Virus record (IMG/VR): IMGVR_UViG_3300032242_000723
Span: 1-64,000 of that record
Reading direction: 5' to 3' (one strand)
Length of the DNA: 64,000 bases
The translations under genes were made by a program, and so were the position numbers. This document shows, piece after piece, positions 44,464-63,979 of this stretch (positions within the stretch are counted from its first letter, which is position 1; each line of letters begins with the position of its first letter). The notes beneath the pieces are model-generated. The model saw only the letters and a list, made by a program, of their open reading frames with translations. It ran no database searches and was not told the origin of the DNA.

Positions 44464-44492
44464 TTGACATCGGAAACGATGTTTGCTATAGT
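44464..44492 (+). promoter_or_regulatory. Sigma70-type promoter
   Basis: TTGACA-17nt-TATAGT (preceded by TGC); a late-type GATAAATA follows at 44522. Confidence 0.7.
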
Positions 44493-53838: not shown

Positions 53839-54519
53839 ATGAGCTTTAACAAACAAAAAACTGATCCCGATTTGGGTCGCAGAGTTCACGAACATCTTGT
53901 TCACGTTGGAGTTGAGACTCCTACTGTAGAAAACAATCTTAGTCGTACTGACAAGATCGAGATTATTGAACGGCATTTCAAGTCTATCATGGAAACAATG
54001 GGACTCGATCTAACTGATGACAGTTTGATTGATACGCCAAAGCGTGTTGCCAAAATGTATATCGGCGAAATCTTTTGGGGCCTCGACTATGAAGCATTCC
54101 CCAAGTGTACCGCAGTTAATAACAAGATGAAATATAATGAGATGGTCGTTGAGCGTAATGTAAACGTTCAATCTAACTGTGAGCATCACTTTGTCATCAT
54201 CGATGGCCTAGCAACAGTCGCATATGTTCCTAACGAAAAGGTACTTGGTCTATCAAAGATCAATCGTATCGTAGAATACTTCAGCAAGCGTCCACAAATC
54301 CAAGAACGTTTGACCGAACAGATTTTTCACACTCTACAATTTATCCTTGAAACAAATGATGTTGCCGTTATGATTGACGCACAACACTATTGCGTAAAAT
54401 CGCGTGGTGTGGAAGATACTGGTTCCTCAACGGTAACGGTTCGTCTTGGTGGCGGATTTAAGAACGATCCTGCTGCTCGTGCTGAGTTTCTTAGCATTGC
54501 ACGTATGGGCAAGTGCTAA
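53839..54519 (+). CDS. folE: GTP cyclohydrolase I
   Basis: DTPKRVAKMY, SNCEHHF, GLSKINRIV, RPQIQERLT, HYCVKSRGV. Confidence 0.96.
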   Translation: MSFNKQKTDPDLGRRVHEHLVHVGVETPTVENNLSRTDKIEIIERHFKSIMETMGLDLTDDSLIDTPKRVAKMYIGEIFWGLDYEAFPKCTAVNNKMKYNEMVVERNVNVQSNCEHHFVIIDGLATVAYVPNEKVLGLSKINRIVEYFSKRPQIQERLTEQIFHTLQFILETNDVAVMIDAQHYCVKSRGVEDTGSSTVTVRLGGGFKNDPAARAEFLSIARMGKC

Positions 54520-54543
54520 CAACTAATCGCCCGATTTTAATGC

Positions 54544-54572
54544 TTGACAATATAGCATGATTCGTCTATGAT
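54544..54572 (+). promoter_or_regulatory. Sigma70-type promoter
   Basis: TTGACA-17nt-TATGAT. Confidence 0.75.
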
Positions 54573-54634
54573 AGTGAAATCGGTCTATGCGTCATCCCGA
54601 TTAAGAAACTCTGCCGCATTACAAAGGATATAAG

Positions 54635-55126
54635 ATGACACAATATATGTATACAAGCACAAAAGAATACCACGATGCGTTTCCTTGTGCATATCGTCAA
54701 TGGCGGGCCGACAGTCACTGTAATAAGATTCATGGCTATTCATTTACTATCAAGGTTTACTTTGGTGCCAACACACTTGATGCACGTAATTGGTGTGCGG
54801 ATTATGGTGGGCTGAAGGACTTGAAGGCAATTCTTGAAGATCAATTTGATCACACACTTCTTGTTGCAGAAGATGATCCTGATATGGATATGTTCAAGAT
54901 GTTGCAAGAGCGTGGTATGGCAAAGCTTACTATCATCCCTGCAACTGGATGTGAAGCACTCGCTGACATGATTTATAAGTTCATCAACAGTGTCTATATT
55001 CCCGATCATTGGGGACAAGGTGAAGCAGAGCGTCTTTGGTGCTATCGTGTTGAAGTTCGCGAAACTCAGAGCAACATGGCTTTTCGTGAAGGTCATCGTG
55101 AATGGAATGAGAATCTGTTAGGATAA
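54635..55126 (+). CDS. queD: 6-carboxytetrahydropterin synthase
   Basis: SHCNKIHGYSF, DYGGLK..K..L...FDHTLL, TGCEALA, VEVRET. Confidence 0.85.
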   Translation: MTQYMYTSTKEYHDAFPCAYRQWRADSHCNKIHGYSFTIKVYFGANTLDARNWCADYGGLKDLKAILEDQFDHTLLVAEDDPDMDMFKMLQERGMAKLTIIPATGCEALADMIYKFINSVYIPDHWGQGEAERLWCYRVEVRETQSNMAFREGHREWNENLLG

Positions 55127-55668
55127 TGAAGCAGATTTATTATTCAAACGAACAGGTCAATGGGTTTGTTCATGAAATCATCAGACAGATGGTGCAAGAG
55201 AATTACAAGCCTGACTATATTGTAGGTATCACTAGGGGAGGTCTTGATTTGGCATTGAAACTAAGTCATTACTTAGATGTCCCCGTGCAAACCCTTAATG
55301 TAAGTTTGCGTGATAGTGAGCATTTTGAATCTAACTGTAGTATGGCAGAAGATGCGTTTGGTTATGTTGACGAAGAAGATCGCAAACAGGTTGGTAGTCG
55401 TTGGGATACGATGAAGCGTAAGAATATTCTTATCGTAGACGATATCAATGACACTGGCGCTACACTTGCATGGATCAAGCAAGATTGGCAAAGTTGTTGC
55501 CTGCCCAATGAACCAAGTTGGGAAACTGTTTGGGGAAACAATGTGAAGTTTGCAGTGTTGGTAGACAACATGGATAGCAAAGAAGAAGTTGACTACAAGG
55601 GTACCGAAATCAATAAGTTTGAGGAGCCTTCTTGGGTTATCTTTCCTTGGGAAAAATGGTGGAAGTAA
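55126..55668 (+). CDS. Type I phosphoribosyltransferase (xanthine/guanine PRT-like)
   Basis: IVGITRGG, ILIVDDINDTGATL (PRPP-binding motif), WVIFPWE. Confidence 0.9.
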   Translation: MKQIYYSNEQVNGFVHEIIRQMVQENYKPDYIVGITRGGLDLALKLSHYLDVPVQTLNVSLRDSEHFESNCSMAEDAFGYVDEEDRKQVGSRWDTMKRKNILIVDDINDTGATLAWIKQDWQSCCLPNEPSWETVWGNNVKFAVLVDNMDSKEEVDYKGTEINKFEEPSWVIFPWEKWWK

Positions 55669-56078
55669 TGGCCACACCAATGCGTGATGATCTAATGGTT
55701 CAGCAACAGATTACCTCTGAGTGGCAACACATGGTGGGCGTAATCATGCTGAACCAAACCCATAGGCAATCGGTAAAAAGAGTCCTACCAGAGTTTCTAT
55801 CATATTGGGACACATGCGAGAAGTTCATAAATAGTACTCCTGAAGAAGTTTACACAGTCATCAGACCATTGGGTTTAGTTGCCGTTCGGGAAAAGAGAAT
55901 CCGAATGATGTCCAACCAATACTTGACTTGGGACAAGAATGATGCTAAAGTGCTTTATGGTATAGGAAAGTACGGTAGTGATAGCTACGAGATTTTCTTT
56001 AAACAGAACTACACAGTGCAACCTACTGACAAAGAGTTGCTCCGTTACTTAGAGGAAGATGTCAATGCAATCACTTAA
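55668..56078 (+). CDS. MBD4-like HhH-GPD DNA glycosylase
   Basis: W...V.VIMLNQT, IRPLGL...R...I, LYGIGKYGSDSYEIF closely follow the MBD4 catalytic domain pattern. Confidence 0.8.
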   Translation: MATPMRDDLMVQQQITSEWQHMVGVIMLNQTHRQSVKRVLPEFLSYWDTCEKFINSTPEEVYTVIRPLGLVAVREKRIRMMSNQYLTWDKNDAKVLYGIGKYGSDSYEIFFKQNYTVQPTDKELLRYLEEDVNAIT

Positions 56079-56919
56079 GATAAGCGAACTATTCTATTCT
56101 ATTCAGGGCGAAGGAAGATATCAGGGTGTCCCGAGTATCTTCCTTAGGACGTTTGGATGTAACTTCACATGTGGCGGCTTTGGCATGCCTAAGGGAGAAA
56201 TGTCTGCTGAGCGTTTAGCGATTGATCCTAAAGAATATAAAGAATATGATGATCTTCCATTGGTCACTACAGGATGTGACTCGTATGCATCATGGGATCC
56301 TCGCTTTAAGAAGTTGTCCCCAGTGATGACGATTGATGCGATTGTTGATCGTATCATGGAACTATTGCCCCACGGTGAATGGCGTGATGAGCATCTTGTG
56401 ATCACAGGAGGTGAACCATTGCTCGGTTGGCAGAAAGTCTTTCCTGCACTGTTGAGTCATCCTAAAATGGCTAATCTTAAAGAGATTACATTTGAGACTA
56501 ACGGTACACAACCGCTTACTCAGGAGTTTGCAAACTATCTTGAAGATTGGACTTGGCCTCTGGAATATCCAGGATTTGAGCGTGAAGTCACTTTCTCTGT
56601 TAGTCCTAAGTTAAGTTGCAGCGGTGAACTTCGTGAAGAAGCGATCAAGCCTAAGGTCGTCAGTGATTACTATCAAGTAGGACATGTTTATCTCAAGTTT
56701 GTTATCGCAACTGAAGAAGATGCTGAAGAAGCATTGGAAGTCACCAAGTTGTATAATGAAGCTGGGTTTAGAGGTTCGGTATATTTCATGCCAGTTGGTG
56801 GTGTTGAAAGTGTCTATCATCTAAACAATCGCAATGTTGCTGATCTTGCCATGAAACATGGTATTCGTTATAGTGATAGATTACATATCCCTTTGTTCGG
56901 AAACAGTTGGGGAACATAG
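56059..56919 (+). CDS. queE: 7-carboxy-7-deazaguanine synthase (radical SAM)
   Basis: ISELFYSIQGEG, FLRTFGCNFTC...GCDSYASWD, ITGGEPL, FETNGT, SVSPKL, RLHI.LFG. Confidence 0.9.
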   Translation: MSMQSLKISELFYSIQGEGRYQGVPSIFLRTFGCNFTCGGFGMPKGEMSAERLAIDPKEYKEYDDLPLVTTGCDSYASWDPRFKKLSPVMTIDAIVDRIMELLPHGEWRDEHLVITGGEPLLGWQKVFPALLSHPKMANLKEITFETNGTQPLTQEFANYLEDWTWPLEYPGFEREVTFSVSPKLSCSGELREEAIKPKVVSDYYQVGHVYLKFVIATEEDAEEALEVTKLYNEAGFRGSVYFMPVGGVESVYHLNNRNVADLAMKHGIRYSDRLHIPLFGNSWGT

Positions 56920-58603: not shown

Positions 58604-59638
58604 ATGACTGATAATATCAAGCGTATTGGTTTTGCGTGTAAGTTTGCAGAAATCAACAAAAAGGGCGAGATCGCTAGTGTCGAGGGTCTTAACACTGGTG
58701 GTACCACGCTAGCCTGGGCAAAGCGTCAATCAAATGCTCGCATCGTTGAAGAAAAGATTATGGATGTCGCAAAACGCAACATCGTAAATACTCACGCACT
58801 TGTCAAAAAGGTAGCAACTCTTCCTGTTGAACTGCGTATGTTACGCATTACCAGTGATATGCTAAGTTTCTATACGCATCCTGACTATCATTATTTTTGG
58901 TCGCGTCAAGATGTTCAGGACAGCCTAGCACGTTGGATGGCTCCTATCGGCGATACTGCTCGCAAACATAATGTTCGCCTATCATTTCATCCTGATCAGT
59001 TTGTAGTTCTTGCTAGTGATCGCGAAGAAGTCGTAGACAACAGTATCCGCGAGTTTGAATATCACGTTGATATGGCACGTTGGATGGGCTATGGCAAGAC
59101 TTTTCAGGATATGAAGATCAATGTTCATATTAGTGGTAGGCAAGGTCCCGATGGTATCAAGAAGGTAATGTCGCGTCTTAGCCCTGAGGCTCGTAACTGT
59201 ATCACTATCGAGAATGACGAGATTACATGGGGCATTGATAGCAGCTTAGAGCTTGCTGATACCTGTGCACTGGTACTCGATATACATCATCACTGGGTCA
59301 TGTCTGGCGAGTATATCGAACCAACTGATGATCGTATTAAGCGTATCGTTGATAGCTGGCGTGGGGTGCGTCCTGTCATTCACTACAGCGTAAGTCGTGA
59401 AGATGTACTGCCTGGTCATTGCAAGGTAACTCGTCCTGAACTAACTACATTACTAGAAAGTGGTCACAATAAACAAAAGCTACGTGCTCATAGTGAATAC
59501 TATTGGAATAGTTCTGTCAACGAGTGGGCAATGGAACACTATGATTGGGCCGATGTGATGTGCGAGAGTAAAGCAAAAAATCTTGCGAGCTTTGCATTAT
59601 ACAATACATACATTAAGAAAAAGGTAACTAATGTTTAA
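58604..59638 (+). CDS. uvsE: UV damage endonuclease
   Basis: RIGFACK, RLSFHPDQF, NVHISG, ITIENDE, VLDIHHHW, HYSVSR, KLRAHS, MCESKAKNLA. Confidence 0.92.
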   Translation: MTDNIKRIGFACKFAEINKKGEIASVEGLNTGGTTLAWAKRQSNARIVEEKIMDVAKRNIVNTHALVKKVATLPVELRMLRITSDMLSFYTHPDYHYFWSRQDVQDSLARWMAPIGDTARKHNVRLSFHPDQFVVLASDREEVVDNSIREFEYHVDMARWMGYGKTFQDMKINVHISGRQGPDGIKKVMSRLSPEARNCITIENDEITWGIDSSLELADTCALVLDIHHHWVMSGEYIEPTDDRIKRIVDSWRGVRPVIHYSVSREDVLPGHCKVTRPELTTLLESGHNKQKLRAHSEYYWNSSVNEWAMEHYDWADVMCESKAKNLASFALYNTYIKKKVTNV

Positions 59639-60092
59639 AGCAATCAAAGACTGGATCAGTCCTCCACCCCCACCCCCTCCCCCGCCACCTCCACCTCCCC
59701 CACCGCCGCCGAAGCCAAAGAAGCCACGTGCTATTCGTAAGCCTAAACCAGTTCCTCCTAAGATAGAACTTACAGCTAAGGAGAAGGCAACGGCTGCAGG
59801 TGAACCATATGTTGCTATTCTACGAGTTGATTTAGATCCTGGTGACATCAATAACGGTTCGTTTGAGTTAGATTGGAACGATAAGTTCTTATTGAATCTG
59901 ATCAAGCAAGGATATAAATTCGCACAAAAAGACACTGATGCTGAGATTGTTGACCGTTGGTTCCAAACAGTATGTCGCAACATCGCAATGGAAGTATATG
60001 AGCAAGAGATTGCTGATCCTGAAAAGCGCGAAAGTGAACTACGCATCATTAGGTCAAAAGATTTAGGCGACGGATTTACTGAGGTTAGTTAA
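59631..60092 (+). CDS. Conserved hypothetical protein with an N-terminal polyproline tract
   Basis: 17 consecutive Pro codons at 59661-59711, then FELDWNDKF...VDRWF. Confidence 0.7.
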   Translation: MFKAIKDWISPPPPPPPPPPPPPPPPPKPKKPRAIRKPKPVPPKIELTAKEKATAAGEPYVAILRVDLDPGDINNGSFELDWNDKFLLNLIKQGYKFAQKDTDAEIVDRWFQTVCRNIAMEVYEQEIADPEKRESELRIIRSKDLGDGFTEVS

Positions 60093-60110: not shown

Positions 60111-60139
60111 TTGACATTTATACCCGATCTTGCTATATT
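60111..60139 (+). promoter_or_regulatory. Sigma70-type promoter
   Basis: TTGACA-17nt-TATATT. Confidence 0.75.
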
Positions 60140-60175
60140 GCATCATAGTCACTCCAACGGGTAAGGAAGAAATCA

Positions 60176-61573
60176 ATGATCTTTAAGCCAAGAAAGTACC
60201 AAAAACGTATTATTACTGCTCAGGATTCGTTCATCGAGGATGTGACCGCTAAGCGGGCCACTATTCTTGCTGCAACTGGTTCCGGAAAGACTGAGTGTTT
60301 CAATGATTTGCTTACTAAGCAATTTCTGACACAAGGCGAAAAGCCTAAGCGTATCCTTATCGCACATCCTCGTATCGCACTTAGCCAAGATCAACAAAAG
60401 CGTCTTGCTAATCGTTTGACAGGAACTGGCGTGGAGTTTACTAGCTTTCACAGTGGTCAGCAAAAGTACCACACTCTTTCTGATCGTAAGAACGTTTCTA
60501 CTACAAATCGTGTTGATTTGCAAAAGATCATGGATGAGGCAAAGGGCCCTCATATCACATTCTCTAGTTATAAGAGTCTTAGTAAGATCGCAAATATGGA
60601 TTTCGATCTTATCATCTGTGATGAGGCTCACAATCTGGTTCAATCAGACCTTCGCGAGTGTTTGCATCTATTCACCAGTAAGACTGTCTTCTACACTGCT
60701 ACGCCTGTTCAGGTTGCTGCACAAGAAGAAAGCATGGACAATATCAGCTTGTTCGGCAACGTAATTGCTACTGTTCCTCCTAGTGAACTTATTCCACTTG
60801 GATATGTTGTTCCTCCTCGGGTACGTACAATTGACGTAAAGAATAAGGTCAACGGCAATACTCCCGACTATGCTACTTGTATCGCAGAGACGTTCAAAGA
60901 TCAACGTAGTCTTGCACACAAGAAGTTTGTGTATAAGATGCTAGTAGCAATGCCATCTACTCTAGTGTTCAACGACATCATGAGTGATCTAGCTGGTATT
61001 CGCAAGATCATCGGTGACTTCAGTGTTGATATCTATTATATCACTGCTGACAACGCGGTTAAAAACGGCCGTATGCTAGTAGACCGTGAAGCTGCATTGG
61101 TAGACTTTGATAAAAATACTAATCCTAGTATCATCATTCACTGTGACACGCTTGCAGAAGGCATTGACGTTTCTGGTATCGGAGGCGTACTCGTCATGCG
61201 TGGTTTGGGTATGGCAAAGGCTATTCAAACGATTGGCCGTGCTGCACGTCCTGCAATTGAAGATGTTCTTCCGAGTGGTAAGATTCGTAAGAACCGCATC
61301 AAGACTGAATGTATCGTTACGATTGCTCGTATCAATGGCGAATGGTGCGGTGACGTTAAGATTGATTGGTGGGTTCAATTGTTCCGTGTTGCTGGATACG
61401 GTGACCTCTGGGACTATTGCGAGCCTAAGACTGTTGAACGCGGTGAAGGTGGCGAGTTGACGGAAGCTGACGATCCTCTCTACGATGAAATTGAGTCTAT
61501 TCGTCACCTTGAAGGTCTCGGTGAATTGCATGACATGCTATTTGGAAGTGATGACAATGCACAGTTGGTTTAA
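60176..61573 (+). CDS. SF2 helicase/ATPase (restriction-associated type)
   Basis: AATGSGKT, ICDEAH, YTATP, LAEGIDV, QTIGRAAR. Confidence 0.88.
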   Translation: MIFKPRKYQKRIITAQDSFIEDVTAKRATILAATGSGKTECFNDLLTKQFLTQGEKPKRILIAHPRIALSQDQQKRLANRLTGTGVEFTSFHSGQQKYHTLSDRKNVSTTNRVDLQKIMDEAKGPHITFSSYKSLSKIANMDFDLIICDEAHNLVQSDLRECLHLFTSKTVFYTATPVQVAAQEESMDNISLFGNVIATVPPSELIPLGYVVPPRVRTIDVKNKVNGNTPDYATCIAETFKDQRSLAHKKFVYKMLVAMPSTLVFNDIMSDLAGIRKIIGDFSVDIYYITADNAVKNGRMLVDREAALVDFDKNTNPSIIIHCDTLAEGIDVSGIGGVLVMRGLGMAKAIQTIGRAARPAIEDVLPSGKIRKNRIKTECIVTIARINGEWCGDVKIDWWVQLFRVAGYGDLWDYCEPKTVERGEGGELTEADDPLYDEIESIRHLEGLGELHDMLFGSDDNAQLV

Positions 61574-62303
61574 ATATTGCACTGATCCTGCTGCATTTGC
61601 GAAGGTTACTACACTACGCAAGTTCATTGAGACTATGCGTAAGCAAGCCAACACCGATGTTGCACTAGTTCCTTATCGCGAAACGGTACGGTTAGAAGAT
61701 TATGATGATATCGAATTTACCGGCGCGTTAAAGGCTCCTCGGTATTTCGGTGCCGGGGTCGAAGCGTTAGCTGAAACATTCTTTGAGGTGTTTGGCAGTG
61801 AGTATAACGTTCAAGGATACAGTAGCCAGGACTCAGTAGAAGTTGACGTAGAAGATACTGGTTATGACGCAGTTGCATATACGTCAAAGCAAAAGAATTA
61901 TGGTAAGCAAATTAGAAAGATTTGCCAACCAGGTAATCATGTATATGTTCAGGTCAAAGGTACCTTGAATCCTACAAAGGAATTCATGACCAATGACGGG
62001 AGTCGTATCATGAATTTCTATGCGAATGCCCAAGGACGTTCTAGGATGATGGGTGAAGCTTACAAGGCAAGGTTCATGCTGTTCACTACTGGCAAAGGGC
62101 TGCACTACAAGCTAGAAGCTAATACCTTTGATGAAATTGAGGTCATCAACTTTAGTATGATCGACAAGAAAATTAACGGCAATCCTTTCTTTTGGAATGC
62201 GTTCTTTATCAAAATGGGCTTGCCTGCAATTCCTATCGAATTTGTTAAGGACCCAGAATATTTGAGTTTAGAAGCTGAACTTGAATTAACCATTGACAAT
62301 TGA
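61551..62303 (+). CDS. Putative Mrr-like PD-(D/E)xK endonuclease
   Basis: GAGVE.LAE.FF...DTGYDA...YVQVK (E...DxGxD...QxK pattern). Confidence 0.6.
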   Translation: MTMHSWFKYCTDPAAFAKVTTLRKFIETMRKQANTDVALVPYRETVRLEDYDDIEFTGALKAPRYFGAGVEALAETFFEVFGSEYNVQGYSSQDSVEVDVEDTGYDAVAYTSKQKNYGKQIRKICQPGNHVYVQVKGTLNPTKEFMTNDGSRIMNFYANAQGRSRMMGEAYKARFMLFTTGKGLHYKLEANTFDEIEVINFSMIDKKINGNPFFWNAFFIKMGLPAIPIEFVKDPEYLSLEAELELTIDN

Positions 62304-62321
62304 TCAGTCTTCGTATATAGT
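62293..62321 (+). promoter_or_regulatory. Sigma70-type promoter for the MTase genes
   Basis: TTGACA-17nt-TATAGT at the end of the nuclease gene. Confidence 0.75.
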
Positions 62322-62357
62322 ACGAAGATAGTAACATCTTACACACAGAGAAAATTT

Positions 62358-63497
62358 ATGGATCTGGTAAAAATCAACGAAGTTATTAGCTATGTGAGGA
62401 CTGGGTTTAAAGGTAAACGCTTTACTAATAACCCGTCTCCATTCACTCCTGCTCCTCTATCGAAAGAGATTCTAAACAAGATTCCTGACGTGTCGGGAAA
62501 AATTGCCGTTTTCTTTACAGTTGAGTTTGCAGTTGAATTGCGGGTACGCGGCGCGGATGATGTGACGATCATTACTGAGCAACATTGCCCTGAAACAAAG
62601 ATCATAGCTGACTATCTTGGTTATAAGTACATGTTGCTACAAGATGTAGAGGGAAACGATATGAAATTCGATGTGGTAGTTGGTAATCCGCCTTATCAAG
62701 GTACAGCAGAAACACACCAAAAATTCTTCAACATGGCAGTTGAACTGACTAAGGACGGTGGTATAGTATCTTTCATACAACCTGCTACTCCGTACTTTAA
62801 TAAAAAAGAAAAGGTCGGCAATCACACTACGGAAATGATCTCAAACATCAAAAAATATCGGTGTGAGGTAAAAATTGTTAGCGGATCAGTATTTGCGGCG
62901 GCAAACATCAATACAGCCTTGGCTATTACGTTATTGACTAAGCTACCAAACACTGCAGGAAATTTAGTAAAATATGAGAGTGAATTGGGCAGGCAATATC
63001 AAAATATCAGTATTGACGCCATTAACATGTTAGATATGGATCCGATATTATACCAATCATTGGTAAATAAGGTATTTAACGTTGTTAATAAAAACGGTTC
63101 AATACAAGAGTTAATTACTACCGATCTATGCGAAAAAAAATTAGACATGAAGCAAATACGGGGAAATGCAGGGCGGCAAGATTTCTATACGTTGATTTCT
63201 CGTGATGCTACAAATTGGAAGGTAGATACTAAGTTTGAATACGGATTATCAGTCAGCGGAATAGCTGACGTTTCCTTTCTAACTAATTATCTAACTTCCT
63301 ACATCGCTAGGTTTTGTTTGTCTATATATAAATTTAATGCAAACAACCATCGAGGAGAACTGCGTAGTGTTCCTCAAGTCCCGTTTAATGTAGACTGGGA
63401 TGACAAAAAGCTTTGCACTTATTTTGGTATCACTGATATTGAGTATGCAGAGATCATTAGGTGTATTCCAGACTATCACGGAAAAAATGTGTCGTAA
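62358..63497 (+). CDS. Adenine MTase catalytic half plus TRD (Eco57I-like)
   Basis: KFDVVVGNPPYQ, FF..A..L.KDGG.VSFIQP; no intact DPxxGxG SAM-binding motif. Confidence 0.8.
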   Translation: MDLVKINEVISYVRTGFKGKRFTNNPSPFTPAPLSKEILNKIPDVSGKIAVFFTVEFAVELRVRGADDVTIITEQHCPETKIIADYLGYKYMLLQDVEGNDMKFDVVVGNPPYQGTAETHQKFFNMAVELTKDGGIVSFIQPATPYFNKKEKVGNHTTEMISNIKKYRCEVKIVSGSVFAAANINTALAITLLTKLPNTAGNLVKYESELGRQYQNISIDAINMLDMDPILYQSLVNKVFNVVNKNGSIQELITTDLCEKKLDMKQIRGNAGRQDFYTLISRDATNWKVDTKFEYGLSVSGIADVSFLTNYLTSYIARFCLSIYKFNANNHRGELRSVPQVPFNVDWDDKKLCTYFGITDIEYAEIIRCIPDYHGKNVS

Positions 63498-63500
63498 ACT

Positions 63501-63947
63501 ATGCAAGTATCTAAGATAGTCGATCACATCCGCAACCGCTCGTACATGAGCGGAGTTGAACGAAGCAACCTAAGAGTGAAGGCTACCGGTGAAGTCTTCA
63601 CTCCAACTCCACTTGTTCAAGAGATACTAGATAAGTTGGATCCTATTCTGTTCACGGATCCAACTAAGACCTTTATCGACCCTAGTTGTGGCGATGGGCA
63701 ATTCTTAGGTGAAGTTCTTATCCGCAAGATAGAGAACGGTAGCACGTTTGAACAGGCATTAGGTACTATATATGGTGTCGATCTGATGCAAGACAACGTT
63801 GATCTATGTCGTGATAGATTACTATGCGGAAGAGAAGACCTCAGACACATTGTCGAAAAGAACATTGTGTGCCATGATGGACTTACGTATGACTATTCGT
63901 TCGGCGAGACCGTAGCGTTTGGCAATGGTTTCTTTAGCTTCACATAA
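63501..63947 (+). CDS. Adenine MTase SAM-binding half
   Basis: TGEVFTP.PLV.EIL, FIDPSCGDGQFL, IYGVDL; no NPPY motif. Confidence 0.82.
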   Translation: MQVSKIVDHIRNRSYMSGVERSNLRVKATGEVFTPTPLVQEILDKLDPILFTDPTKTFIDPSCGDGQFLGEVLIRKIENGSTFEQALGTIYGVDLMQDNVDLCRDRLLCGREDLRHIVEKNIVCHDGLTYDYSFGETVAFGNGFFSFT

Positions 63948-63950
63948 GGC

Positions 63951-63979
63951 TTGACATCTATCCATTAAGTGCGTATATT
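63951..63979 (+). promoter_or_regulatory. Sigma70-type promoter for the next gene
   Basis: TTGACA-17nt-TATATT. Confidence 0.7.

What the first reader, a model, noticed from the sequence alone, without database searches (positions are those of the whole stretch)
60111..63947. Phage-borne four-gene restriction-like module with a complementarily split methyltransferase
Seen: the order is promoter, SF2 helicase, Mrr-like nuclease, second promoter, MTase A, MTase B, then the next promoter. A has NPPY and a TRD but a decayed SAM motif (FTPAPLSKEILNKI...IAVFFTVEF). B has the matching FTPTPLVQEILDKL plus an intact DPSCGDG but no NPPY. Established: Type ISP enzymes fuse Mrr nuclease, SF2 helicase, N6A-MTase and TRD in one chain. 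Inference: the same parts list split into four proteins, with a heterodimeric MTase formed by duplication and reciprocal loss, and separately promoted so that protection precedes cutting. It could act against co-infecting phages or host DNA, which is notable in a phage that also modifies G.
Basis: partly seen in the sequence, partly recalled or inferred. Interest (0 to 1): 0.6.

Follow-up and report, generated by a model that had tools for sequence, protein, structure and literature searches.

The report
Phage-borne split Type ISP-like module
A giant T4-like phage from fresh water carries four early genes (a DNA motor, a DNA cutter, a DNA methylase that has lost its cofactor loop, and a small cofactor-binding fragment) that look like a known one-piece restriction enzyme taken apart; many aquatic phages share the design, but I found no description or test of it.

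Summary
Window 60111-63979 holds promoter, SF2 helicase (H), PD-(D/E)xK nuclease (N), promoter, NPPY methyltransferase with TRD but no Gly-rich SAM loop (A), a 148-aa fragment with an intact SAM site (B), then another promoter.

It is not a one-off. The four genes recur in about 17 non-redundant aquatic T4-like phage loci and in cyanophage ACG-2014f, in several gene orders.

Natural fusions tie the parts together: N+H, T5orf172+H, [T5orf172-like]+ResIII helicase+A, and one 1076-aa N+H+A chain with the Type ISP domain order.

A is a swappable cassette. A sibling phage about 93% identical in DNA has H, N and B at 95-99% amino-acid identity but A at 31%.

B aligns end to end with the first 133 residues of an intact A. 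Its tail FGNGFF lies on A's VGNPPF, and it is under strong purifying selection. Short A forms without an N-half, and a fused circular permutant in Aeromonas phages, support complementation in trans. However, B also follows many A genes with an intact SAM loop, so complementation cannot be its whole role.

"Protection precedes cutting" has no support. Restriction activity, the A-B complex and the target DNA are untested. I rate it a new variant of a known kind.

The parts
60111..60139 (+). Sigma-70-type promoter-like site (TTGACA-N17-TATATT, TG before the -10) upstream of H
   Evidence: It matches 11 of 12 consensus positions and is one of 4 perfect TTGACA-N17-TATAnT sites in 64 kb (0.09 expected). 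It is a consensus match only; transcription was not shown.
60176..61573 (+). H: SF2 helicase-like ATPase, 465 aa (ResIII/DEAD plus Helicase_C). Inferred to be the dsDNA translocase.
   Evidence: Pfam; phrog_16; partial matches to Type I R subunits; motifs I, II, III and VI intact. It belongs to the same family as the cyanophage T4-GC36 helicase.
61557..62303 (+). N: Mrr/MspJI-like PD-(D/E)xK nuclease, 248 aa. Its start overlaps the end of H.
   Evidence: E69, D104, Q132, K134 invariant; pLDDT 88; MspJI, AspBHI and Avs4 nuclease domains, Z 8.1-8.6. Searches show relatives fused N-terminally to an H-family helicase; one of them passes Pfam Mrr_cat_2.
62293..62321 (+). Second promoter-like site (TTGACA-N17-TATAGT), inside the 3' end of N and upstream of A
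62358..63497 (+). A: gamma-class N6-adenine DNA methyltransferase with a C-terminal TRD, 379 aa. NPPY lies at 110; the Gly-rich SAM loop is missing (FFTVEF in its place).
   Evidence: (AlphaFold2 pLDDT 91, complete Rossmann fold). (best folds CamA, M.TaqI, M.BseCI, BpuSI). (the N-half is hardly conserved; the NPPY half is strongly conserved).
62388..63521 (+). Allelic cassette (nearly all of A plus the first 21 nt of B), replaced by 1051 unrelated bases in a sibling phage about 93% identical in DNA
   Evidence: joint 62387/63522 in a freshwater contig. (L104: H 95, N 99, B 95, A 31 % amino-acid identity).
63501..63947 (+). B: truncated methyltransferase paralogue, 148 aa. Motifs X, I (DPSCGDG), II and III are intact; motif IV has decayed to FGNGFF. 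Its start lies 3 nt after the stop of A.
   Evidence: (about 80% amino-acid identity against 35-50% identity at third codon positions, i.e. strong purifying selection). (7623 clusters). (look-alike clusters are 98-100% viral).
63951..63979 (+). Third promoter-like site (TTGACA-N17-TATATT), which marks the downstream boundary of the module

Best explanation
The four genes encode a phage-borne, ATP-dependent restriction-modification-like machine with the parts of a Type ISP enzyme on separate polypeptides.

Shown:
- H is an intact SF2 ATPase.
- N is a PD-(D/E)xK nuclease of the Mrr/MspJI kind with an intact catalytic tetrad.
- A is a gamma-class N6-adenine methyltransferase with its own TRD but no Gly-rich SAM loop.
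- B is a truncated paralogue of A that keeps the SAM-binding motifs and is under very strong purifying selection.
- The four genes travel together in many T4-like aquatic phages, and in some relatives they are fused into fewer chains or into one.
- A is an exchangeable specificity cassette.

Inferred:
- A reads an asymmetric site through its TRD.
- Methylation needs B as the SAM-binding partner. Translational coupling would make A and B in matched amounts.
- Methylated phage DNA is spared. On unmethylated DNA (host chromosome or a co-infecting phage) the A-B complex engages H, which translocates, and N cuts.
- Strong early promoters switch the module on at once through the host RNA polymerase. 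The incoming genome already carries the mark from the previous cycle.
For: Gene identities.

Conserved linkage in changing order (H-N-A-B, H-A-N-B, N-H-A-B, A-H-N, B-N-A-H) across loci whose H proteins are only 25-66% identical.

Rosetta-stone fusions:
- P0363 is N domain + H-family helicase (E 1e-68) + MTase + TRD in one 1076-aa chain, on a T4-like contig.
- P0433 and P0356 are N+H. P0356 passes Pfam Mrr_cat_2.
- A T5orf172 nuclease domain fused to the helicase stands beside A-B in L018, L019, L054 and L067.
- Chains of 1140-1236 aa hold a ResIII helicase, MTase and TRD and are followed by B.

Specificity turnover as in restriction systems:
- TRD identity is 16% where H, N and B are 65-82% identical.
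- L018 versus L019: H 100%, TRD 11%.
- A whole-gene allele swap occurs between siblings about 93% identical in DNA, and both alleles are present in the same freshwater runs.

B as a trans-acting SAM half:
- All 17 H+N-linked A genes lack the Gly loop.
- Short A genes begin at NPPY and are followed by B, including P-SSM2 genes 036/037.
- The Aeromonas phage proteins are natural fusions of a short A with B.
- P0363, with its own Gly loop, has no B beside it.
Against: - No activity of any kind was measured.
- The complex prediction for A+B gave no verdict.
- AlphaFold2 models A as a complete Rossmann fold that uses its own strands 1-3. Where B would dock is therefore unclear.
- B also follows about 30 A genes with an intact Gly loop, and follows arrays of 2-5 A paralogues.
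- Most A-B loci surveyed have no H or N within 8 kb. The A-B core may therefore simply be a protective methylase.
- The H family is a near-core helicase of cyanomyoviruses and occurs without A, B or N nearby, for example in S-PM2.
- The loss of the Gly loop in H+N-linked A genes looks like a single phylogenetic event, so the association has no independent replicates.
- The bacterial analogue dnmA-yeeB-yeeC showed no restriction in Bacillus subtilis (PMC9973331).
Confidence: 0.55

Rival explanations
1. A-B is mainly a self-protective (anti-restriction) methylase. It is swapped and multiplied to match the restriction systems of different hosts. H and N are neighbours with a job of their own, such as unspecific host DNA breakdown, recombination or repair, that methylation does not gate.
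For: Most B-bearing loci have A-B but no H or N within 8 kb. Arrays of up to five A paralogues with one B fit broad protective methylation. The H family is near-core in cyanomyoviruses and can stand alone. Cassette swapping of A fits this reading as well as it fits restriction.
Against: Single chains that join nuclease, H-family helicase, MTase and TRD (P0363) argue for mechanical coupling, as do T5orf172-helicase fusions always placed directly beside A-B. The four genes stay together while their order is reshuffled. Exhaustive search of the N family found 161 clusters, and all eleven loci found through N carried H and A.
Confidence: 0.25
2. B is not a catalytic partner of A. It is a SAM-binding regulator or scaffold, for example a second pseudo-protomer like the non-catalytic subunit of METTL3-METTL14 (recalled from my own knowledge, not searched here), or a decoy that interferes with host methylase-containing defences.
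For: B accompanies A genes whose SAM loop is intact. A is modelled as a complete fold without B. B is far more conserved (about 80%) than any part of A between lineages whose H and N are only about 30% identical. This hints at a partner or ligand common to all lineages.
Against: Short A genes that start at NPPY, and the fused circular permutants, make no SAM-binding half of their own. The B-type half must therefore work in catalysis there. B is almost always placed directly behind A, often overlapping it.
Confidence: 0.15
3. The module is a decaying relic without function, like the Bacillus subtilis dnmA-yeeB-yeeC cluster.
For: A has lost its SAM loop, B has lost NPPY, and A and B are separated by a single in-frame stop.
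Against: All catalytic motifs of H and N are intact and invariant. B shows strong purifying selection. The same split arrangement is kept across very divergent phages. Strong promoters lie in front of each pair.
Confidence: 0.05

Closest known systems
[quoted passage not shown]
   Same: The domain set is the same: Mrr-family nuclease, SF2 helicase-like ATPase, gamma-class N6-adenine methyltransferase and a C-terminal TRD. As here, LlaGI and LlaBIII are more than 95% alike in the first three domains and differ in the TRD. A relative of this module (P0363) has all four domains in one chain in the same order.
   Different: Here there are four separate genes in a lytic-type T4-like phage rather than one chain on a bacterial plasmid. 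The methylase lacks its SAM loop, and an extra truncated methylase (B) is present. The coupler domain was not identified. No translocation or collision cleavage was shown.
Bacterial dnmA-yeeB-yeeC clusters (MmeI-like methylase, SF2 helicase, T5orf172/GIY-YIG protein; PMC9973331)
   Same: It is a multi-gene set of a methylase with its own TRD, an SF2 helicase and a nuclease-type protein in a conserved cluster. The L018, L019, L054 and L067 relatives of this module use a T5orf172 domain with the helicase.
   Different: In the window the nuclease is PD-(D/E)xK, not T5orf172. The gene order differs. No B-like fragment is reported for dnmA clusters. Those are bacterial defence-island genes; this module is phage-borne. 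Homology between A and DnmA was not tested here.
Type III systems (Mod plus Res)
   Same: H followed by N repeats the domain order of Res (helicase, then PD-(D/E)xK nuclease). A then B (NPPY, TRD, then SAM motifs) mimics the beta-class motif order of Mod.
   Different: By sequence, A and B belong to the gamma-class families Eco57I and N6_Mtase, not to N6_N4_Mtase. A still carries an N-terminal pseudo-half.
Circularly permuted methylases of Aeromonas T4-like phages (Aeh1 ORF084c, phrog_11371). Permuted EcoKI-like methylases are noted in jumbo phages (PMC7824862).
   Same: Residues 102-375 of A and 13-123 of B match one 415-aa protein in the order NPPY, TRD, motif X, motif I.
   Different: Those are single fused chains, and Aeh1 has no helicase or nuclease nearby. 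The window has two genes and keeps a decayed N-half in A.
Heterodimeric or pseudo-dimeric methyltransferases (METTL3-METTL14, MTA1-MTA9; M.AquI and M.EcoHK31I are recalled from memory)
   Same: An active chain is paired with a degenerate paralogue, or an enzyme is made of two polypeptides.
   Different: They belong to different methylase classes. In the window neither chain has both a SAM loop and NPPY. Physical pairing was not shown.

Membership tests
Type ISP restriction-modification enzyme | All activities in a single polypeptide | tested here: not met
   There are four ORFs with their own starts and stops. A single-chain relative exists elsewhere (P0363).
Type ISP restriction-modification enzyme | Mrr-family PD-(D/E)xK nuclease with D...(Q/E)xK | tested here: met
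   N has E69, D104, Q132 and K134 invariant. Its fold matches MspJI, AspBHI and Avs4 at Z 8.1-8.6. A fused relative passes Pfam Mrr_cat_2 at 25.5 bits against a cut-off of 22. N itself has no Pfam hit.
Type ISP restriction-modification enzyme | SF2 helicase-like ATPase with intact motifs | tested here: met
   ResIII, DEAD and Helicase_C. GSGKT, DEAH, TATP and QxxGRxxR are present.
Type ISP restriction-modification enzyme | Gamma-class N6-adenine methyltransferase followed by a TRD | tested here: inconclusive
   NPPY, the fold and the TRD are present in A. Motif I is absent from A and is present only in B.
Type ISP restriction-modification enzyme | ATP-driven translocation from an unmethylated site and cleavage on collision | not testable with these tools
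   This needs biochemistry.
Type I restriction-modification system | Separate HsdS specificity subunit, and HsdR with nuclease and helicase in one chain | tested here: not met
   The TRD is part of A. No HsdS-like gene lies in 56-64 kb. Nuclease and helicase are separate genes.
Type III restriction-modification system | Beta-class Mod of the N6_N4_Mtase family | tested here: not met
   A hits Eco57I and B hits N6_Mtase. Neither hits N6_N4_Mtase.
dnmA-yeeB-yeeC type cluster | Methylase with TRD, SF2 helicase and T5orf172 protein | tested here: not met
   In the window the nuclease is PD-(D/E)xK. Relatives L018, L019, L054 and L067 do carry T5orf172 fused to the helicase. Sequence relatedness of A to DnmA was not tested.
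Trans-complementing (split) methyltransferase | Neither chain alone holds both the SAM-binding motif I and the catalytic motif IV | tested here: met
   A has NPPY and no Gly loop. B has DPSCGDG, with FGNGFF in place of NPPY.
Trans-complementing (split) methyltransferase | The two chains bind each other, and activity needs both | tested here: inconclusive
   The complex prediction gave no verdict. Indirect support comes from short A plus B pairs and from fused permutants. Indirect doubt comes from B also following intact A genes.
Known anti-phage defence systems (PADLOC-DB 2.0) | Full-length match to a system protein | tested here: not met
   There are only partial, low-scoring matches to generic helicase and methylase models. 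N has none.

The most novel reading that the evidence does not exclude
B is a universal, trans-acting SAM-binding subunit that serves interchangeable catalytic/specificity subunits (A). One B supplies arrays of up to five A paralogues, short A genes that lack any SAM half, and A genes coupled to a nuclease-helicase. On this reading, aquatic T4-like phages run a modular 'one cofactor subunit, many specificity subunits' methylation and restriction system. The family would also preserve, side by side, every stage of circular permutation by duplication: intact A plus B, decayed A plus B, short A plus B, and the fused permutant.
Probability: 0.3. Interest if true: 0.8.

Novelty: new variant of a known kind. 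Interest (0 to 1): 0.62.

Why it matters
If the module restricts DNA, it would be an ATP-dependent restriction-modification enzyme carried by lytic-type T4-like phages, including giant freshwater phages and marine cyanophages. I found no paper describing one (a full-text search of open-access papers only). Such an enzyme could destroy host DNA or rival phages. Its specificity gene is exchanged between near-identical phages within one population.

The A-B pair is much more widespread: thousands of B clusters, almost all viral. It offers a natural series for a long-standing model of how methyltransferases become circularly permuted.

It also offers a test of whether a Rossmann-fold enzyme can draw its cofactor-binding half from a shared separate subunit.

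Cultured carriers exist (Prochlorococcus phage P-SSM2, Synechococcus phages ACG-2014f and S-CAM7, Aeromonas phage Aeh1), so the questions can be tested directly.

Tried and rejected
- Complex prediction of A+B with SAM: score 0.14 against a mark of 0.32, no verdict. It is not evidence either way.
- Megablast of the module against phage records: no match.
- tblastn of N against phage records: no match. The cyanophage N was found only by profile comparison.
- Profile of N against PDB sequences: no match.
- Profile of N against 185,579 prokaryote genomes: none. This scan was limited to one peptide pattern.
- Pfam, NCBIfam and PADLOC for N: nothing.
- Seven literature searches found no description of this module.
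- No RNA runs hold the stretch, so expression could not be checked.

Rejected ideas:
1. A-B is one gene broken by a nonsense codon or read through at TAA. In relatives the two genes overlap in other frames or are separated by N.
2. B is a dead remnant, or a DNA-level homology arm for cassette exchange. Third codon positions are near saturation while the protein stays about 80% identical.
3. B was spread by recent transfer. The same codon evidence argues against it.
4. Loss of the Gly loop is independently correlated with H+N. The quick tree puts the H+N-linked A genes in one weakly supported group, so this counts as one event. My first two regular expressions for motif I were too strict. Loops such as DPAIGGG and DPAFAGG count as intact or nearly so.


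Full report
**1. What is in the window**

The window is the first 64 kb of a 333,115-base IMG/VR virus record, estimated 92% complete. The surrounding genes are T4-like: family B DNA polymerase, FolE, QueD, a phosphoribosyltransferase, an HhH-GPD protein, a radical-SAM QueE-like protein, two glycosyltransferase-like proteins and UvdE.

The finding spans four + strand ORFs:
- H, 60176-61573, 465 aa.
- N, 61557-62303, 248 aa, with its start overlapping the end of H.
- A, 62358-63497, 379 aa.
- B, 63501-63947, 148 aa.

A and B share a reading frame and are separated by TAA and one codon.

Promoter-like sites TTGACA-N17-TATAnT lie at 60111, 62293 and 63951. Only four such perfect sites occur in 64 kb, against 0.09 expected, and three of them bracket this module. 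Promoter function itself is not shown.

**2. The four proteins**

H:
- It matches ResIII, DEAD and Helicase_C.
- It keeps motifs I, II, III and VI.
- Its weak full-length neighbours are Type I R subunits.

N:
- It has no family hit.
- It has 66 close homologues by the word search and 161 representative clusters in an exhaustive profile search of 1.84 billion proteins.
- In an alignment of 27 of them, E69, D104, Q132 and K134 are invariant.
- The AlphaFold2 model (pLDDT 88) matches restriction-endonuclease folds. The nuclease domains of MspJI, AspBHI and Avs4 come first at Z 8.1-8.6. That Z is middling. The call rests on fold plus motif plus the relative P0356, which passes Pfam Mrr_cat_2.

A:
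- It matches Eco57I around NPPY.
- It is modelled with pLDDT 91 as a complete gamma-class methylase with a C-terminal TRD. The nearest folds are CamA, M.TaqI, M.BseCI and BpuSI.
- Where motif I should be it reads FFTVEF.
- In 31 homologues the first 100 residues have almost no conserved column, while the NPPY half is strongly conserved.

B:
- It matches the first part of N6_Mtase and of M.BseCI and HsdM, with DPSCGDG intact.

**3. The module recurs**

Contigs found through N, through B and through phage records show the same four genes in about 17 non-redundant loci. The orders seen are H-N-A-B, H-A-N-B, N-H-A-B and A-H-N, plus B-N-A-H in Synechococcus phage ACG-2014f. There the 200-aa protein between B and A matches the N profile at 98.4% probability.

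These loci carry T4-type genes such as gp23, portal, UvsX and a gp41-like helicase. N relatives were not found in 185,579 prokaryote genomes, though that scan used one pattern only. B look-alike clusters are 98-100% viral.

**4. Fusions link the parts**

- P0363 (1076 aa, on a contig with gp23) holds an N domain, an H-family helicase (E 1e-68), a methylase with FGAGE and NPPF, and a TRD in one chain. This is the Type ISP order.
- P0433 and P0356 are N+H.
- In L018, L019, L054 and L067 a T5orf172 domain is fused to the helicase, directly upstream of A-B.
- Nine loci have chains of 1140-1236 aa followed by B. Pfam finds an MTase in the four tested and ResIII in two of them. Their N-termini look T5orf172-like by eye only.

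The nuclease type thus varies while the helicase-methylase-TRD core stays. This is the strongest evidence that H, N and A act together. The mechanism itself (translocation, then cutting of unmethylated DNA) is inferred from Type ISP enzymes (PMC3553950, PMC4666363) and was not tested.

**5. A is a swappable cassette**

- Between the window and L004, H, N and B are 65, 69 and 82% identical, but the TRD is 16%.
- L018 and L019 have identical helicases and an 11% identical TRD.
- Laying freshwater metagenome contigs on the stretch gave one contig that follows the window at about 93% DNA identity through H and N. It leaves at 62387, returns at 63522 and holds 1051 other bases between.
- That contig (L104) encodes UvdE, H, N and B at 95-99% identity and a 360-aa A allele at 31%. 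That allele also lacks a Gly loop.
- Low-depth contigs with the window's own allele occur in the same runs.

Such turnover fits selection on sequence specificity. It does not tell restriction apart from protective methylation.

**6. What B is**

B aligns from end to end with residues 1-133 of an intact A (L018; 28% identity, E 1e-10). Its tail FGNGFF lies on VGNPPF. B is therefore a truncated paralogue that stops just after a decayed motif IV.

Between lineages whose H and N are only about 30% identical, B stays about 80% identical while third codon positions are 35-50% identical. This shows strong purifying selection on the protein rather than recent transfer or decay.

The word search found 7623 clusters. 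In 80 viral loci an A gene nearly always lies directly upstream of B, often overlapping it.

**7. Does B complement A?**

For:
- All 17 H+N-linked A genes lack a Gly loop.
- About nine A genes start at NPPY with no N-half, yet are followed by B. In P-SSM2, gene 036 (193 aa, NPPY at 9) and gene 037 (B) overlap.
- In Aeromonas phages a short A and B are fused into a circular permutant.
- P0363, with its own loop, has no B beside it.

Against:
- About 30 A genes with intact loops (DPAIGGGQF, DPACGRG) also have B. Arrays of two to five A paralogues share one B.
- A is modelled as a complete fold on its own.
- The H+N-linked A genes form one weakly supported group, so the loop loss is probably one event.

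I conclude that B can serve as the SAM half in trans, and probably does so in the window. It must also have a further or more general role that is not yet understood.

**8.

- 'Protection precedes cutting' has no support. The two promoters are of the same kind and strength by consensus, and H-N comes first.
- 'Modifies G' is plausible from FolE, QueD and QueE. However, no TGT/DpdA match exists in the record, and there is only a weak QueC-like hit at 69035.

**9. Comparison with known systems**

- The module works like a Type ISP enzyme but fails the single-chain criterion.
- Among multi-gene systems it is closest to bacterial dnmA-yeeB-yeeC (PMC9973331).
- It has no counterpart in PADLOC.
- Circularly permuted EcoKI-like methylases in jumbo phages have been noted (PMC7824862).
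- I found no paper on the A-B pair, on B, or on the four-gene set. The library covers only open-access papers.

**10. Verdict**

- It is most likely a split, phage-borne Type ISP-like restriction-modification module with an extra SAM-binding subunit (confidence 0.55).
- The main rival is a protective methylase that merely sits beside a helicase-nuclease pair (0.25).
- Novelty: new variant of a known kind. Interest: 0.62.

Noticed in passing
window 59631-60092 (+): A 153-aa protein with a run of 17 prolines. It gives a weak PHROG hit to a virion structural protein. The near-identical sibling phage (L104) has a 147-aa version, so the length, possibly of the proline tract, differs between the two.
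   Followed up: partly
window 53839-56919, and G000 69035-69220: A 7-deazaguanine-type gene set: FolE, QueD, a phosphoribosyltransferase, an HhH-GPD protein and a radical-SAM QueE-like protein, flanked by glycosyltransferase-like genes. No TGT/DpdA match was found in the whole 333-kb record, and only a weak QueC-like hit. This may mean the base enters DNA by a route other than a DpdA-type base exchange, or that the DpdA is too divergent to detect.
   Followed up: partly
L043 1502-8540; L068; L077; L082; L010 3251-6734: Tandem arrays of two to five A-type methylase paralogues, with near-identical N-terminal halves and different TRDs, followed by a single B gene.
   Followed up: partly
L108 (Prochlorococcus phage P-SSM2) 3906-7665: PSSM2_036 is a 193-aa short A that starts at NPPY. 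PSSM2_037 is B and overlaps it. The T4-GC36 helicase PSSM2_039 belongs to the H family (E 4e-73). H-family helicases occur in 415 cyanophage records, sometimes next to a Dam-type methylase (S-RIM2) and sometimes alone (S-PM2).
   Followed up: partly
window 44464-44492 (+): The fourth and only other perfect TTGACA-N17-TATAnT site in the window. The other three all border the module. Perfect consensus promoters are therefore rare in this phage and concentrated here.
   Followed up: no
L006 6579-8001 and L007: In this relative the H helicase is split into two overlapping ORFs (355 and 155 aa) in two independent assemblies. This is either a real split or a programmed or accidental frameshift.
   Followed up: no
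window 62388-63521; runs X2, X3, X6: Freshwater metagenomes hold both the window's A allele (low-depth contigs) and the alternative 360-aa allele on an otherwise about 93% identical backbone. The specificity gene is therefore polymorphic within natural populations.
   Followed up: yes
L001 (Aeromonas phage Aeh1) 2887-6248: The fused permuted methylase ORF084c lies near a homologue of beta-glucosyl-HMC alpha-glucosyltransferase. No helicase or nuclease of the H or N families lies in the 10.8-kb stretch.
   Followed up: no
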